The position numbers and the translations under genes were made by a program. Shown piece by piece: positions 4,981 through 35,573 of a stretch of 64,000 bases of DNA. The notes under the pieces were generated by a model. That model was not told where the DNA came from, did no database searches, and saw only the letters and a list, made by a program, of their open reading frames with translations. The stretch's first letter is position 1. Every line of letters begins with the position of its first letter. The DNA is taken from the IMG/VR virus record IMGVR_UViG_3300044644_001125, positions 62,001 to 126,000 of that record; one strand, 5' to 3'.

Positions 4981-5994
4981 ATGAACTACGTAATAGATAC
5001 CTTTAGAGAACTACTTCCACCACTTAAATCCAGTGCTAGTAAATGGCAGAGTTTCAACTGCCCTTGCTGCCAGCATCTTGGTCACAACCGAGATACTCGT
5101 AAACGCGCTGGAGTTATGCTAGGTCCAGGAATTGTGTTCAATTGCTTTAATTGCAAATTCACTGCAGGGTGGCAACCCGGCCGTCCTATATCCGATAACA
5201 TGAAACGCCTGTGCGCTTGGCTAGGAGCAAGTGACGCCGAAATCAAACGAATTGTATTCGAATCTCTTAAGGCAGAATCATCCGACTATGAACCAGATGA
5301 GAACAGCTTAGTTACCTTTACTGAAAAAGACTTACCAGAAGGTTCACTTCCTTTAGCTGAATGGATCTTGGTACAAGATTTAGATGACAGCATAGCCAAT
5401 CATCTTTTAGGTGTAGTGGAATACGTGCTATCTCGTGGACTAGATCCAATGAGCGATACGTTCTACTGGAGTCCAAATCCTGCATTTTCTGATAGACTTA
5501 TCTTACCATTCTGGTATAATACCAAAATTGTTGGGTATACAGCACGACGTATTACCAACAATAGACCTAAGTATCTATCTGAACAACACCCTCATTTTGT
5601 GTTCAATTTGGATGCACAAGATCCAATGAATCGGTATGTGTTGGTAACAGAAGGACCATTTGATGCACTTAGTATCAATGGCGTTGCGTTGTTAACAAAT
5701 AACATTGCAGATCAACAAGCACGTATGATTAATCGATTAGGTAAAGAAGTCATCGTGATACCAGACCAAGACATGGCTGGCTTGGCAGTTATTAAACGAG
5801 CCATTGAGTATGGGTGGTCTGTTGCATTTCCTACTTGGGAGCCTGATATAAAGGATTGTGCAGATGCAGTATTGCGTTATGGTAAGTTGTTTGTTATAGT
5901 TGACGTTATTAAATCTGCTGAAAGACACGAAGCAACAATTCGAATTAAAATGAAACATTTAGAACAACAAATACGGAGTTTGCATGGCAATTAA
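4981..5994 (+). CDS. DNA primase (gp61-like)
   Basis: CPCC...CFNC zinc-binding domain; TEGPFDAL and DQD TOPRIM motifs. Confidence 0.9.
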   Translation: MNYVIDTFRELLPPLKSSASKWQSFNCPCCQHLGHNRDTRKRAGVMLGPGIVFNCFNCKFTAGWQPGRPISDNMKRLCAWLGASDAEIKRIVFESLKAESSDYEPDENSLVTFTEKDLPEGSLPLAEWILVQDLDDSIANHLLGVVEYVLSRGLDPMSDTFYWSPNPAFSDRLILPFWYNTKIVGYTARRITNNRPKYLSEQHPHFVFNLDAQDPMNRYVLVTEGPFDALSINGVALLTNNIADQQARMINRLGKEVIVIPDQDMAGLAVIKRAIEYGWSVAFPTWEPDIKDCADAVLRYGKLFVIVDVIKSAERHEATIRIKMKHLEQQIRSLHGN

Positions 5995-7822
5995 GAACTA
6001 TGATTATGATGTACAGAAAATGTACCTAGAACTAATGTTATCTGATGCAGAAACATTTGTACGTTGCCAAAGCATTTTTGACCATTCATTATTTGATAAA
6101 AAACTACAACCTGCTGCTGAATTCATCCTAGAATATGTAAAAGGTTATACCGTGTTACCCGATTACAATATGGTTAATACTTCATGCCGTGCTAATTTAA
6201 AACCACCAAGTGAACTAAAAGAAGGTCATACCGCATGGTTAATTGATGAGTTTGAACAATTCATACGACATAAGTCATTGGAACGTGCGATCATTGCTTC
6301 AGCTGATCTTTTAGACCAACATGATTATGGTTCAGTAGAAGCACTTATCAAAGAAGCAGTACAGATTGGTTTAGCACGTGATATGGGCATTGATTATTAT
6401 GAAGACCCGAGAACACGTTTGATGGGACTAAAAGATAAGAATGGCCAGGTGTCTACCGGTTGGGATTCATTAGATAAGATGTTATACGGTGGATTCAACC
6501 GAGGTGAACTAGAAATCTTCGCAGGTGGTTCTGGTTGTGTCATATATAGTACACCGGTTGAAGTTAGGGAAGTAGTAGACAGTATTTTTGGATTACCGAA
6601 GCATGTCCCAATTGGCTCATTATTAAACAACACTGGTAAATTCGTAGTAAACAGCCCAGATGGTTGGGTTCCAGTACTTGATTGTGTGGAAAAACTAAAA
6701 GATGAGTTATACACGTTTGTATTTGAATCTGGTGTAACCATTACTGCTAGTCATGACCACTTGTATCAGAAACCAGACTTATCATGGCACTATGCTAAAG
6801 ATTTGCAAATAGGTGATGTTCTTTTAGCAGAACGCGGTTCTGATAAGATTGTTTCATTATCTTTTAGTAAGGAACCAACTAAAGTATATGACTTATCAGT
6901 AGATCACGACAATCACAGATATTACACGGATACTATCTGCAGTCATAACACTGGTAAAAGTTTATTCTTAGCAAACCTAAGTGTTAACTTCTCATTTGCT
7001 GGGTTAAATGTTGTATATATCACATTAGAGTTAAGTGAACCATTAGTTGGTATGCGTATCGATTCTATGGTTACTGGTATTGGTACCCGTGATGTATTCA
7101 AACAACTAGATGAAGTTGAAATGAAAGTTAAGATGATTGGTAAAAAGTCAGGATCATTACAAATCAAATATCTCCCAAGCGGGAAAACGGTCAATGATAT
7201 TCGCAGTTATCTAAAAGAGTATGAAGTTAAAACTGGACTACGTGCAGACATTATCGTAATCGATTATATGGATTTGTTAATGCCAATTGGTAAGAAGATT
7301 TCAGCAGAAAACTTGTACATTAAGGATAAGTATGTTGCAGAAGAACTACGTAACTTGGCAGTAGAGAAGAATGCTGTTGGAATTAGCGCCGCACAATTAA
7401 ATCGAGGAAGTGTGGAGGAGGTAGAATTCGACCACAGTCATATCTCTGGTGGTATCAGTAAGATTCAAACAGCGGATAACGTGTTTGGTATCTTTACCTC
7501 GAGAGCCATGAGAGAACGCGGTAGGTATCAACTACAATTCATGAAAACTCGTAGTTCTAGTGGTGTTGGTCAAAAGATAGACTTAGATTTTAATATCGAT
7601 AGTTTACGCATAACTGACGTACCTGAAGTTGAACAAGAAGCCAGTGGCGTAAGAGTAATAAACTCAACTGATTCGTTGATTGACAACATCAAACGTAAAA
7701 CAAGTTTGGAAAATGCGAATGCTATTCCAGTAACCGTAATCAGCAGCAAAGGAACTGAAGTTGGGTCAACTAAACTACGTTCTATTATTAACAACCTAGG
7801 GACAGAAGAAGATGAATATTGA
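5984..7822 (+). CDS. Replicative DNA helicase (gp41/DnaB-like) containing an intein
   Basis: Walker A GGSG/TGKS split by insertion; ITLELSE, IDYMDL, AAQLNR, KTRS motifs. Confidence 0.92.
   Translation: MAIKNYDYDVQKMYLELMLSDAETFVRCQSIFDHSLFDKKLQPAAEFILEYVKGYTVLPDYNMVNTSCRANLKPPSELKEGHTAWLIDEFEQFIRHKSLERAIIASADLLDQHDYGSVEALIKEAVQIGLARDMGIDYYEDPRTRLMGLKDKNGQVSTGWDSLDKMLYGGFNRGELEIFAGGSGCVIYSTPVEVREVVDSIFGLPKHVPIGSLLNNTGKFVVNSPDGWVPVLDCVEKLKDELYTFVFESGVTITASHDHLYQKPDLSWHYAKDLQIGDVLLAERGSDKIVSLSFSKEPTKVYDLSVDHDNHRYYTDTICSHNTGKSLFLANLSVNFSFAGLNVVYITLELSEPLVGMRIDSMVTGIGTRDVFKQLDEVEMKVKMIGKKSGSLQIKYLPSGKTVNDIRSYLKEYEVKTGLRADIIVIDYMDLLMPIGKKISAENLYIKDKYVAEELRNLAVEKNAVGISAAQLNRGSVEEVEFDHSHISGGISKIQTADNVFGIFTSRAMRERGRYQLQFMKTRSSSGVGQKIDLDFNIDSLRITDVPEVEQEASGVRVINSTDSLIDNIKRKTSLENANAIPVTVISSKGTEVGSTKLRSIINNLGTEEDEY
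6536..6949 (+). mobile_element. Mini-intein (138 aa) in helicase P-loop
   Basis: Starts with Cys (CVIYST), TASHDH block B, VYDLSV block F, ends SHN followed by Thr; no endonuclease domain. Confidence 0.9.
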
Positions 7823-17637: not shown

Positions 17638-17904
17638 GATAGTCTGATGTGGTCGATGGTTTCGTGGACTGTTAAGGTTTCAGTAATTAAGTTAATCACG
17701 GTGCCGTTTTCCAGTGGTTTAAGTGATACGATGTATTTTGTGTTAATATAGATCGTTTCGTGTTGTTCGTTGGTAACTGGTAGTAGCATAAGGATCCTTT
17801 TGATTATGGCTCGTCACTAACGTGACTCGCTAGGTTATATGTGTATGTATATGTGTATAATTACCCGCGTGAATGGCGTACACTCACAGCGGGTAATGTG
17901 GATT

Positions 17905-18327
17905 CTAAAGTAAATCGTGGATATGGTAGCAATTTTGGTAGAAGTAAGGTAGTTTAGTTTTACCTACTGATTCGTTTTCTACACGAAACTCGTAGAAGTA
18001 ATCGTCATAATCGTCTGTGTTAGATTCTTTAGTTGGTTCGTACTCCCAGAATGTCACGATGCCGCTACCAGATACGGTTAGGTAGTTTGCCCATGATGGT
18101 GCTGGTGAGTCGGTTATATCGGCTAGTGCTAGTGGCAATTCGATGACTGTTGGTTTGGTCACAGGTGTGAATGATTCGCCTAGATACGTTGAACTTGACA
18201 TACTGAACACGTCATCACTGATAATCCATGTTTCACCGTAGTGTGCATTGACTTGATTGTCTTTGATGCTAATGAATAACGCGCCAGTTGGGATTGTGCT
18301 TGTGTCGATTACTTCGTATGCTTTCAT
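17905..18327 (-). CDS. Early hypothetical protein
   Basis: Cassette promoter and SD. Confidence 0.7.
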   Translation of the reverse strand: MKAYEVIDTSTIPTGALFISIKDNQVNAHYGETWIISDDVFSMSSSTYLGESFTPVTKPTVIELPLALADITDSPAPSWANYLTVSGSGIVTFWEYEPTKESNTDDYDDYFYEFRVENESVGKTKLPYFYQNCYHIHDLL

Positions 18328-18408
18328 GGTCTTTGCTCCGGTAGTGCTTGTTAAGTTGGGTATAGTTTAATCGTAAATTGACGAACTGTCAAGCATTATC
18401 TTTTAGAA

Positions 18409-18540
18409 AAAGAAAAACCTAACAGAGCACTACTTCTGTTAGGTTGTTTCAGTGGTGGTATACTAGGGTCACTACTCCCACATTGACCACCTTGTTACTG
18501 GGCGTTGGTTAGGTTTCCATGCCCAGTGGATTTGCACTAC
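18409..18540 (-). ncRNA. Candidate sRNA/3'-UTR RNA with AGUAGUG loops ending in a terminator
   Basis: Hairpin 18416-18445 (loop AGTAGTGC, U-tail); hairpin 18454-18491 (loop AGTAGTGA); further GTAGTGC at 18534-18540. Confidence 0.55.
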
Positions 18541-18987
18541 ACTTTGAATTTTGGGTTTGTTTTGCCAATGGTTGCCGCGCTTAGTAGCTGGATTGTTTTG
18601 TTGTCGAATCCGAGCTGTTTGGCTAGGTCTTTGACTGTTTCTTTTGGTTTAGTGGGTTTGTTCATTTGGCAGTGCCTATTTGTGTTTTAAGGGGTGTACA
18701 AGGCTCGCGCGTTGCGCTCGCGAGCCTAATGTTTATAAACCTTTTAATAACTGGTTTACTACTGGTTTTAAATCGTCTTGTAGGTTATCTAGTTCTAATT
18801 GGTATTCTAAACTTTCGCTGTATTGTTCTAAATCTCTTACTACATAGTCAAGTAATCTCATTCTACCTTCTAGGGTTAGGACTTCGTACATATCAATGGT
18901 AATTGGACTGTAGTTACTCATGGGTAGTGCCTCTTTGTTTTGTTAAGGTGGTGCTATTCTAAAAGATAATTAACGCACTGTCAAGTA

Positions 18988-23388: not shown

Positions 23389-23461
23389 CTTGTTTACTCC
23401 GTAGTGCTTTGTTAAGGTGGGTACATTATAGTTGCAATGTACCCAGTTGTCAAGTTATCTT

Positions 23462-27485: not shown

Positions 27486-27514
27486 AAAAAAATGCCCAGC
27501 TACAAGAACTGGGC
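27486..27514 (-). terminator. Intrinsic terminator
   Basis: GCCCAG stem with U7 tail on minus strand. Confidence 0.75.
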
Positions 27515-27680
27515 GAGGTGAGTGTACATCAGGTGCTAATATCAGGCACTACTCCGATACTAGCCTCCTTTGGGTGGTAGATCCGCAAGGCACTACTCCT
27601 GCAAATCTATCTGGGTTGCCAATACAAGGCACTACTCCTGCATTGACGGGTACTACCTTAACACAACGAATTGTCTGTTT
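27486..27680 (-). ncRNA. Candidate three-hairpin sRNA with identical GGAGUAGUGCCU loops
   Basis: Hairpins 27618-27647, 27578-27609, 27535-27564 with different stems, fully paired only on the minus strand (G-U), and an identical 12-nt loop. Confidence 0.7.
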
Positions 27681-27693
27681 CATGTCTATTCTC

Positions 27694-27855: not shown

Positions 27856-27931
27856 TGGTGCCATTACAGGGATTCGAACCCCGATCTTACGCATTATGAG
27901 TACGCGGCATTAACCGTTATGCTATAATGGC
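27856..27931 (-). tRNA. tRNA with CAU anticodon (elongator Met or Ile2)
   Basis: GCCATTA/TAATGGC acceptor, GCAT/ATGC D stem, CT-CAT-AA loop, GTTCGAATC T loop, encoded CCA; lacks initiator features. Confidence 0.92.
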
Positions 27932-34197: not shown

Positions 34198-35573
34198 TTA
34201 CTCCGTAGTGCTTGTTAAGGTGGTGATAGTTTAATTGGAAACTATCACCGTGTCAAGTTATCTTTTAGTCTTCAGATTCTCTGCGGTCTAATTCAATGGC
34301 TAGTAACTCTTGCATAACTTCAGTAAAGGCATCTCTTGATTCTAATTCTGAATACAACTCAAACTTGAGTTCCAGTTCATCGTATGTCATTTCACTGATT
34401 TGGTTTTTGATTTCATTTATGTTCATTGGTAGTGCCTCTGGGTTGGTTAGGTTAGGCTCGCGCGTTGCGCTCGCGAGCCATGTATGTTGTTTAGATGATA
34501 CAATCGTTATCTGCATCAATTTCCAATGTTACGCATTCGGTGGAAATATCGTCACCATTATCAATCCATGCCAATCCAACACGATTTTTATCTATTGTGA
34601 ATTGTTCATCTGCGTATGCAACCGATACCACTACCGGTAAGTCTGCATCGAATGTGGATAATACTGCAATTAGTTCTTTGATTGTCATTATCTTTACTCC
34701 GTAGTGCTTGTTAAGGTGGTGATAGTTTAATTGGAAACTATCACCTTGTCAAGTTATCTTTTAGGTTAGGCTCGCGCGTTGCGCTCGCAAGCCTTGTATG
34801 TTTAGGTTGACACCTACTTGATTAGAGTAGTTAGAAGGTGCAGTTTCCTTCCATGCCAAGTATCACTTGCACTGCACCCTTATGTCATTATCTTTTAGGT
34901 TATTGGTCTTCGTATGCTCTGGCTAGTAACTCTGCCGTTTTAAAGATATGGTGAACTCTATCATCTTTTAGTGCGATTTCAAGAGCCTCCTCGTCATCAA
35001 TCGAGAAGTCATTGTCAAAGTGTTCTACCATGTACTCCTCGAAACTATCTGCCTCAGATTCTAGCAAGTAGTCTAAGATACTAGACAAACGGTTTAAGTT
35101 GGTTTCTGTTAAGGTGATTGTTCTGTATTGTTCGCTCATTGTCTATTACTCCGTAGTGCTTTGTTAAGGTGCGAGTAGTATATTACTACTCGCTAAGTTT
35201 GTCAACTTCTATTCATGGTACATTTTACCGTTAAATTCTACTGCTTGTGGTTCATCGTCAGAATCTGCCCAATCAGTCCAGTAAATCGCGTCATCCGCGT
35301 AAGCATCTTCGTAAGTGGCATATCCAGCCGCAATACTCCATTCAACTGCATCTTTGATATTCTTAAAGTATTGGTCTGCCTCGCTGGTAACCCATCCTGC
35401 GTTCATACCTTCACCAGTGATTGAACAAACTCGCATCCAAGTTTTAAATTCTGTAGTCATTGTCTTTACTCCGTAGTGCTTTGTTAAGGTGCGAGTAGTA
35501 TATTACTACTCGCTTTAAATGTCAACTATTTTTTTCTTCGTACTGGCTCGTGCCTATCGGCACTCGCAGAAAT

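What the first reader, a model, noticed from the sequence alone, without database searches (positions are those of the whole stretch)
18409..18540. Second, sequence-unrelated RNA displaying the same AGUAGUG anti-leader loop
Seen: downstream of a 41-aa ORF (18540-18665, minus) are a hairpin with loop AGUAGUGA (18454-18491) and a terminator hairpin whose loop is AGUAGUGC (18416-18445), plus another GUAGUGC at 18534-18540. The stems share no sequence with the 27.5 kb RNA, only the loop word. Two independent scaffolds with the same seed support selection on the loop and suggest a family of anti-leader RNAs.
Basis: partly seen in the sequence, partly recalled or inferred. Interest (0 to 1): 0.75.

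Follow-up and report, generated by a model that had tools for sequence, protein, structure and literature searches.

The report
Phage 3'UTR RNA displaying anti-leader loops
In an uncultured lake-water giant phage, the tail of a small early gene folds into three conserved hairpins that show, three times, the exact complement of a 7-letter word sitting beside the ribosome-binding site of 44 early genes. It is therefore probably a regulatory RNA that acts on the whole early gene class, though this has not been tested.

Summary
Window 18405-18545 (minus strand) is the 3'UTR of a 42-aa ORF. It folds into three hairpins and ends in an intrinsic terminator. GUAGUG appears three times, always in accessible positions: at the stop codon, in the loop of the second hairpin (HP1), and in the terminator loop.

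The window comes from a 327-kb uncultured freshwater phage. There, GCACUAC lies next to the Shine-Dalgarno sequence of 44 early genes.

Fifteen distinct natural versions of this 3'UTR support the structure: 8 base pairs show compensatory changes. The terminator stem occurs in five versions, yet its 8-nt loop AGUAGUGC never changes, so selection acts on the loop sequence itself.

Across the genome, only four long-stem hairpins carry this loop. Three are in the 27.5-kb element and one is here. Those two elements also end at the only two convincing intrinsic terminators in the array of about 45 early promoters.

The most likely function is a loop-seed antisense RNA, similar to OxyS or RNAIII, that pairs with early leaders. 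This rests on complementarity and conservation only. Transcription, processing and regulation have not been shown, and a protein that reads the loop cannot be excluded. There is no Rfam family and no cultured relative. Two more distant relatives lack both the leader word and the loops.

The parts
18956..18984 (-). Sigma70-type early promoter (TTGACA-17-TAGAAT) of the transcription unit that ends in this RNA
   Evidence: 11 of 12 matches; one of about 45 such promoters
18733..18921 (-). 62-aa ORF, first gene of the unit in this genome, with a class-b leader (AGAGGCACUACCCAUG)
   Evidence: homologues at 67-100% identity in metagenome contigs
18702..18726 (-). GC-rich hairpin without a U-tract, between the two ORFs
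   Evidence: sequence; the same repeat near 34470
18537..18665 (-). 42-aa ORF (stop included), probably a real small two-helix protein; always found together with the 3'UTR
   Evidence: Across 15 distinct DNA versions, variable sites by codon position are 10/4/14. Model has two helices at low confidence
18535..18540 (-). GUAGUG copy 1, single-stranded, overlapping the stop codon (GUG-UAG-UG)
   Evidence: invariant in 15 variants; opening energy 0.35 kcal/mol
18497..18527 (-). HP0: hairpin whose large loop AUGGAAACCUAACCAA is almost invariant; function unknown
   Evidence: two compensatory pairs in the stem; no target found
18454..18491 (-). HP1: composite hairpin with a GGUGGU/ACCACC lower stem. 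Its loop AGUAGUGA (18469-18476) carries GUAGUG copy 2
   Evidence: Loop variants are A/G/C-GUAGUGA, and in one relative (L055) CCUAGUGAA on a different stem
18416..18445 (-). Intrinsic terminator hairpin, 11 bp. Its loop AGUAGUGC (18427-18434) carries GUAGUG copy 3
   Evidence: Five stem versions with 6 compensatory pairs and an invariant loop
18405..18415 (-). U-tract of the terminator (UUUUUCUUUUU)
18364..18392 (-). Next early promoter, immediately after the terminator (terminator-then-promoter junction)
18341..18347 (-). GCACUAC leader word of the next gene: one example of the 44 proposed targets
27494..27690 (-). The sister element: three hairpins of 11-12 bp, each with loop AGUAGUGC, followed by the only other strong terminator of the early array (27494-27514)

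Best explanation
Window 18405-18545 (minus strand) is the structured 3'UTR of a mobile small-gene cassette, made of a 42-aa ORF plus this UTR, in the early region of a 327-kb freshwater phage. It ends in one of only two strong intrinsic terminators in the early array. Read-through transcripts from about 16 upstream early promoters should therefore all end with it.

The RNA shows GUAGUG three times in accessible positions: a single-stranded 5' copy at the stop codon, the HP1 loop and the terminator loop. I propose that these act as seeds that pair with GCACUAC. That word sits directly 5' of the Shine-Dalgarno sequence in 34 early leaders, and between the Shine-Dalgarno sequence and the AUG in 10 more. 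Pairing would hinder 30S binding or change mRNA decay. As early transcripts and their stable 3' fragments build up, this would give class-wide feedback on early-gene expression.

Shown: the structure, its covariation, invariance of the loop, the exact complementarity, accessibility on both sides, and the position at the terminator.

Inferred: transcription, any processing into a separate RNA, the pairing itself, and whether the effect is repression or activation.
For: Structure:
- Three hairpins.
- On 15 distinct natural sequences, 98.6% of cells are paired and 8 pairs show changes on both sides, against 0-1 in slid controls.

Selection on the loop:
- The terminator stem occurs in five versions. 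All five loop-proximal pairs vary, yet 0 of 8 loop columns vary.
- Terminal loops vary at 4 of 29 columns against 39 of 102 in the rest of the UTR, p = 0.014.

Complementarity:
- GCACTAC occurs 50 times on the minus strand against 14 expected; 44 copies are leader-like, with G before CACTAC in 43 of 44.
- CACTAC and GCACTA are the two most frequent leader 6-mers, in 42 and 40 of 43 leaders, and they are exactly the words shown in antisense in the long-stem loops.
- The word is the only element shared by both leader layouts.

Accessibility and energy:
- Leader word unpaired probability is 0.8.
- The 7-bp duplex is -10.8 kcal/mol, or -21 kcal/mol if the 3' arm opens.
- The three GUAGUG words are among the most accessible 7-mers in the RNA.

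Architecture:
- There are only two convincing terminators in the array of about 45 promoters, and each ends a GUAGUG-displaying element.

Consistency across relatives:
- Relatives carrying the RNA keep GCACUAC leaders.
- Two distant relatives lack both.

Precedent:
Against: - No experiment and no strand-specific RNA data exist. The metatranscriptome contigs are low-depth (2-7x) single-read-sized pieces, and DNA carry-over is possible.
- Leader word and loop are both invariant in all available relatives, so there is no covariation between target and seed.
- The pairing is only 6-7 bp inside 8-nt loops.
- The HP1 loop ends in A where pairing would call for C, and that A is invariant.
- The invariant 5' A of the terminator loop never faces a U in the leaders.
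- Several identical loops on long stems is also the layout of protein-binding RNAs.
- Compensatory stem changes in relatives reduce the extended 3'-arm complementarity, so only the loop seed is conserved.
Confidence: 0.45

Rival explanations
1. The AGUAGUGC/AGUAGUGA loops are binding sites for a phage or host RNA-binding protein, such as a termination or antitermination factor, a nuclease, a chaperone or a sponge target. On this view the complementarity to the leader word is secondary.
For: - Four hairpins share the identical 8-nt loop and the same 11-12 bp stem length on unrelated stems, a layout typical of protein-recognised hairpins.
- Loop positions that cannot pair with the leader are also invariant: the 5' A, and the 3' A of HP1.
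- The 42-aa two-helix protein is always linked to the UTR.
- Some sRNA terminator loops act without direct pairing (PMC11979758).
Against: - By my own estimate (not a tool result), the chance that a protein-selected loop is the exact reverse complement of the single most conserved leader word is about 0.003 or less. The estimate uses roughly 22 conserved leader 7-mers out of 16384 possible 7-mers.
- No candidate protein has any family assignment.
- The third GUAGUG copy is linear, not in a hairpin.
Confidence: 0.2
2. It is simply a terminator and 3'-end stabiliser built from inverted pieces of promoter-leader cassettes, a by-product of cassette shuffling. The GUAGUG words would then be inherited from an inverted leader copy and have no trans function.
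For: - The terminator reads as a leader-like 5' arm, then the loop, then an antisense leader (13 of 14 bases).
- HP1 resembles the inverted repeat that spans the -10 box of the early promoters.
- The region is a shuffling hot spot. The cassette sits in at least 6 different neighbourhoods, and assembly joints occur at promoter repeats, as with PeSL cassettes (PMC4122927).
Against: - A relic would not keep an 8-nt loop invariant through five compensated stem versions.
- The stem changes erase the extended leader similarity but leave the loop untouched.
- Three accessible copies in 141 nt, and a second element with three more, are not expected from debris.
Confidence: 0.15
3. The element acts only in cis. 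On long read-through early transcripts, the 3'-terminal GUAGUG loops pair with leader words of the same molecule, shaping its folding, decay or the translation of internal cistrons.
For: - With only two terminators for about 45 promoters, most early transcripts should carry both many leader words and the 3' element.
- The operon's own first leader has GGCACUAC.
Against: - Most copies of the 42-aa ORF have a ribosome-binding site without the word.
- There is no consistent downstream or upstream partner across neighbourhoods.
- Three loops cannot serve tens of leaders in one molecule.
Confidence: 0.12
4. The conserved word works at the DNA level, as an oriented site for a DNA-binding or replication protein. 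The hairpins would then be inverted repeats in duplex DNA.
For: The strong strand bias of CACTAC across the early region could reflect a polar DNA signal.
Against: - The conserved part is the centre of the palindrome while the arms vary, the opposite of dimeric operator sites.
- The hairpin is followed by a U-tract on the transcribed strand.
- The word tracks the ribosome-binding site in two different layouts, which points to an RNA-level role.
Confidence: 0.05

Closest known systems
OxyS sRNA acting on fhlA (E. coli)
   Same: Seeds are shown in two hairpin loops, one of them the terminator loop. Short (7-9 nt) loop pairing occurs at a translation initiation region (cited in PMC11979758).
   Different: OxyS is a stand-alone host sRNA with its own promoter and gene-specific targets. 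This RNA is a phage 3'UTR whose seed matches a word shared by 44 leaders. There is no sequence similarity and no Rfam hit.
Staphylococcus aureus RNAIII and RsaE (C-rich loop seeds against Shine-Dalgarno regions)
   Same: The same short motif is repeated in several hairpin loops, including a 3' terminal hairpin, and targets many ribosome-binding regions (from my own knowledge; not tested here).
   Different: Those loops pair with the Shine-Dalgarno sequence itself. Here the seed pairs with a phage-specific word next to it. The organism, size and sequence all differ.
P1/P7 c4 antisense RNA (Rfam C4)
   Same: A phage RNA, co-transcribed with protein genes, whose loop sequences pair with a leader and block a ribosome-binding site (from my own knowledge).
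   Different: c4 targets one operon (icd-ant) and is released by RNase P. No match to the Rfam model here.
3'UTR-derived sRNAs (CpxQ, SroC and DapZ type)
   Same: The RNA lies directly after a stop codon, shares the mRNA's intrinsic terminator with a U-tail, and has a conserved accessible seed near the stop codon.
   Different: Processing into a separate RNA and any dependence on a chaperone are unknown here.
PeSL promoter-terminator cassettes of T4-like phages (PMC2839356, PMC4122927)
   Same: A stem-loop followed at once by a near-consensus sigma70 early promoter, in a hyperplastic region of small ORFs that shuffle between close relatives.
   Different: PeSL stem-loops recur at many junctions, and no conserved loop word complementary to the leaders was found in the passages read. 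Here only two terminators exist in the array, and it is the loop, not the stem, that is conserved.
CsrB/RsmZ-type protein sponges
   Same: Several hairpins present the same short loop motif.
   Different: The defining GGA loop motif is not the conserved element here. The terminator loop context is AGAAGUAGUGC in this genome.

Membership tests
Intrinsic (Rho-independent) terminator | Stable stem with G-C pairs followed directly by a U-tract on the transcribed strand | tested here: met
   11-bp stem (4 G-C pairs) followed by UUUUUCUUUUU; the stem is kept by compensatory changes
3'UTR-derived regulatory RNA | Lies downstream of a real coding gene on the same strand and uses its terminator | tested here: met
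   A 42-aa ORF conserved in 15 DNA versions, with the fewest changes at codon position 2; the UTR always follows it
3'UTR-derived regulatory RNA | Accumulates as a separate stable RNA, by processing or from an internal promoter | not testable with these tools
   No internal promoter seen. Only unstranded low-depth contigs from an RNA library are available
Loop-seed base-pairing sRNA (OxyS/RNAIII-like) | Conserved, accessible seed presented in hairpin loops | tested here: met
   Loops are invariant or nearly so while the stems covary; opening energies 0.1-0.7 kcal/mol
Loop-seed base-pairing sRNA (OxyS/RNAIII-like) | Seed is complementary to the translation initiation regions of its targets | tested here: met
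   GUAGUGC pairs with GCACUAC beside the Shine-Dalgarno sequence in 44 leaders; duplex -10.8 kcal/mol and target unpaired probability 0.8
Loop-seed base-pairing sRNA (OxyS/RNAIII-like) | Regulation is lost with seed mutations and restored by compensatory target mutations | not testable with these tools
   Needs a reporter assay
Any Rfam family (including C4 antisense RNA) | Score at or above the family's gathering threshold | tested here: not met
   Only a tRNA in the window at gathering thresholds. The best local hits score 10-19 bits against thresholds of 48-100
CsrB/RsmZ-type sponge | Repeated GGA motifs in the hairpin loops | tested here: not met
   The loops are AGUAGUGA and AGUAGUGC. The conserved core is GUAGUG, not GGA
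PeSL-type mobile promoter-terminator cassette | Stem-loop directly followed by a sigma70 early promoter, at junctions where close relatives differ in gene content | tested here: met
   Terminator at 18416-18445, then promoter at 18392-18364. The cassette sits in at least 6 neighbourhoods, and an indel at 17907-18376 is seen in a lake population
PeSL-type mobile promoter-terminator cassette | The stem-loop recurs at many intergenic junctions of the hyperplastic region | tested here: not met
   Only two convincing terminators in the roughly 25-kb array; the promoters recur but the terminator does not

The most novel reading that the evidence does not exclude
A phage-encoded, class-wide RNA control system. 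Two RNAs sit at the only two terminators of the early-gene array. Each shows three copies of the complement of a 7-nt word that this phage lineage has placed beside the ribosome-binding site of all 44 early genes. Accumulating 3'-end RNA would then titrate or silence the whole early class by RNA-RNA pairing, acting as an RNA-based timer in place of a protein such as T4 RegA or RegB.
Probability: 0.35. Interest if true: 0.8.

Novelty: new variant of a known kind. Interest (0 to 1): 0.62.

Why it matters
If the pairing is real, this phage controls an entire temporal gene class through one short leader word and a few RNA loops. Control of that kind has so far been described for proteins (T4 RegA and RegB), not for a phage RNA.

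It would add giant-phage 3'UTRs as a source of trans-acting RNAs. It would also give a compact, portable word-and-loop pair that could be tested, and possibly reused, in sigma70 hosts.

Even without the trans function, the locus is a clean natural example of purifying selection on a terminator loop sequence. That bears on recent findings that terminator loops of sRNAs carry information (PMC11979758).

Tried and rejected
- **Close cultured relatives:** megablast and tblastn against 50,697 phage records found none.
- **IMG/VR scan for paired GGAGTAGTGCC:** besides the known relative, it returned only unrelated tandem coding repeats.
- **Scans for a looser leader word and for a conserved UTR linker:** only chance hits plus the same relative.
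- **DNA search of the early region in five large contigs related through their large-terminase (TerL) gene:** nothing.
- **Two distant relatives, G006 and G003:** both have promoter arrays, but no strict leader word and no recurrent loop word. Two identical ACUCCUUU loops in G006 lie inside a coding gene and were dismissed.
- **Genome-wide duplex-energy scan:** timed out and was replaced by blastn-short.
- **Target search for the invariant HP0 loop:** found only the RNA's own terminator arm.
- **CsrA-sponge reading:** rejected because GGA is not the conserved core.
- **tRNA-like and Rfam readings:** rejected.
- **The 42-aa protein:** no Pfam or PHROG family and only a low-confidence two-helix model.
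- **Loops versus paired columns alone:** not significant (p = 0.12-0.23). The significant contrasts are loops against the rest of the UTR, and the terminator loop against its own upper stem.
- **Not attempted:** a protein-RNA or RNA-RNA complex prediction, because shuffled-RNA controls would not separate the hypotheses.

Full report
**Context.** The window is bases 62001-126000 of a 327,256-bp virus record with 38% G+C. The record has no close cultured relative. Near-identical DNA occurs in many lake-water and freshwater metagenomes. Window positions of about 14-39 kb hold an array of small minus-strand ORFs. Nearly every ORF has a near-consensus sigma70 promoter and a conserved leader.

**The leader word.**
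- 42 of 43 promoter-leaders contain CACTAC.
- Genome-wide, GCACTAC occurs 50 times on the minus strand against 14 expected, and 44 of those copies are leader-like.
- In 34 leaders the word lies directly 5' of the Shine-Dalgarno sequence (class a). In 10 it lies between the Shine-Dalgarno sequence and the AUG (class b).
- It is the only element common to both layouts, which points to a function of the word itself near the ribosome-binding site.

**The observation.**
- GUAGUG lies at 18535-18540 (overlapping the stop codon), at 18470-18475 (loop AGUAGUGA of hairpin 18454-18491) and at 18428-18433 (loop AGUAGUGC of the 11-bp hairpin 18416-18445).
- That last hairpin is followed by a U-tract and is the only terminator-like site in 17-20 kb.
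- There is a third hairpin, HP0, at 18497-18527.
- The upstream ORF is 42 aa, not 41.
- The fold is much more stable than shuffles (z = -3.7).
- The three GUAGUG words are among the most accessible 7-mers in the RNA.

**Chance.**
- In the early region, 5 of 9 sense-strand GTAGTG copies sit in hairpin loops against a 3.7% background.
- Leaving out the three copies at 27.5 kb, 2 of 6 copies do (about p = 0.02).
- Genome-wide, the only long-stem (11-12 bp) hairpins with the word in the loop are this terminator and the three hairpins at 27.5 kb. All four have the identical 8-nt loop AGUAGUGC.
- An unbiased tally shows that the two most frequent leader 6-mers are exactly the words shown in antisense in these loops.

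The best antisense copy of the class-a leader in the whole genome is window 18420-18433 (13 of 14 bases), which is the loop plus the 3' arm of the terminator. The 27.5-kb hairpins match class-b-type leaders over 9-12 nt. In this genome the stems of the two elements are otherwise unrelated. In some relatives, however, the terminator reads GGAGUAGUGCC, the same 11-mer as at 27.5 kb.

**Relatives and covariation.**
- A 72-kb IMG/VR contig is 89-97% identical and carries both elements.
- Searching with the neighbouring 62-aa ORF and with the 42-aa ORF gave 24 further loci from metagenome assemblies.
- Together these yield 15 distinct versions of the 3'UTR.
- On these versions the three-hairpin structure has 98.6% of cells paired and 8 pairs with changes on both sides, against 0-1 when the partners are slid.
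- The terminator stem exists in five versions. All five loop-proximal pairs vary with compensation, while none of the eight loop positions varies. By my own combinatorial estimate, 5 of 5 variable pairs against 0 of 8 loop columns has a probability of about 8e-4; the rows are related, so this is indicative only.
- The HP1 loop keeps GUAGUGA while the base before it varies (A, G or C). One relative, L055, has CCUAGUGAA on a different stem.
- Terminal loops as a class vary less than the rest of the UTR (4 of 29 against 39 of 102 columns, p = 0.014).
- The loop sequence itself is therefore under selection. This is the strongest new result.
- The compensatory stem changes weaken the extended 3'-arm match to the leader, so only the loop seed is conserved.

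**The cassette.**
- The 42-aa ORF and the UTR always travel together, but sit in at least six different gene neighbourhoods.
- A lake population lacks the next gene: a joint runs from 17907 to 18376.
- The ORF looks coding, with the fewest changes at codon position 2. Its model has two helices at low confidence, and it has no family.
- Most copies of the ORF have a ribosome-binding site without the leader word.

**Architecture.**
- In the whole early array of about 25 kb and about 45 promoters, only two convincing intrinsic terminators exist: 27494-27514 and 18416-18445.
- Each closes one GUAGUG-displaying element.
- Read-through transcripts from about 16 promoters should therefore end with this RNA, making it a likely abundant 3' fragment.

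**Transcription.** Promoter, gene and terminator orientation all imply minus-strand transcription. A freshwater metatranscriptome holds 151-nt contigs over 18376-18512 and 18513-18663, at a depth of 2-7, similar to neighbouring early genes. The contigs are unstranded, and DNA carry-over cannot be excluded, so transcription is likely but not shown.

**Mechanism.**
- The best reading is a loop-seed antisense RNA that pairs with GCACUAC beside the Shine-Dalgarno sequence.
- The duplex is 7 bp at -10.8 kcal/mol, and the target is predicted unpaired with probability 0.8.
- Pairing would modulate translation or decay of the early class.
- Precedents are OxyS, whose terminator loop kisses the fhlA initiation region (cited in PMC11979758), and, from my own knowledge, RNAIII, RsaE and P1 c4.

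**What weakens this reading.**
- There is no target-seed covariation, because both are invariant in every relative that has them.
- Some invariant loop positions cannot pair with the leader.
- Identical loops on long stems also suit a protein-binding motif.
- Two distant relatives lack both the strict word and the loops. That fits the model, but it is only two lineages.

**Comparison with known systems.** There is no Rfam family. The locus is not a CsrB-like sponge, because GGA is not the conserved core. The terminator-then-promoter junction and the shuffling resemble PeSL cassettes (PMC4122927). Here, however, the terminator is rare in the array, and its loop rather than its stem is what is conserved.

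**Verdict.** The feature is real, and the loop is under selection. I file it as a new variant of the loop-seed or 3'UTR-derived regulatory RNA kind, with its function unproven.

Noticed in passing
window 13500-39000, minus strand: About 45 sigma70 early promoters but only two convincing intrinsic terminators (27494-27514 and 18416-18445). Both close a GUAGUG-displaying element.
   Followed up: yes
window 14700-38900, each early promoter (e.g. 23425-23453, 35497-35525): An inverted repeat spans the -10 box, pairing the promoter spacer with the first transcribed bases. Its arms covary between promoters (GGGTAC/GTACCC, GATAG/CTATC, GCGAGTAGT/ACTACTCGC). On read-through transcripts this would form a hairpin just before each leader.
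   Followed up: partly
window 18396-18406 and upstream of many other -35 boxes: A conserved CTAAAAGATAA box lies 1-4 nt upstream of TTGACA. It may be an UP-like element or a recombination joint, since assembly joints in a lake population fall there.
   Followed up: no
window 18497-18527: The HP0 loop AUGGAAACCUAACCAA is almost invariant while its stem covaries. It resembles a leader segment in the sense orientation and can pair with the terminator's 3' arm. No other target was found.
   Followed up: partly
window 18702-18726 and about 34455-34480: A repeated GC-rich hairpin (GGCTCGCG...CGCGAGCC) without a U-tract lies between ORFs. Variants of it precede the 42-aa ORF in relatives.
   Followed up: no
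window 17790-17900, minus strand: A long structured leader, rich in CA/TA and lacking the CACUAC word, precedes the 52-aa ORF. It is conserved in relatives, where it follows this RNA's terminator directly.
   Followed up: no
window 27494-27690, minus strand: The three hairpins at 27.5 kb are overlapped by a 44-aa ORF in which the repeat would encode AGVVPC twice. All three differences in the close relative are non-synonymous, which argues against coding.
   Followed up: partly
window 27856-27931, minus strand: A tRNA-Met (CAU) with its own early promoter lies in the same unit as the 27.5-kb element.
   Followed up: no
window 5984-7822, plus strand: A DnaB-like helicase with Hint/intein domain signals, suggesting an intein insertion.
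   Followed up: no
L179:12-334: One metagenome contig carries two tandem copies of the 42-aa ORF. Only the second is followed by the 3'UTR.
   Followed up: no
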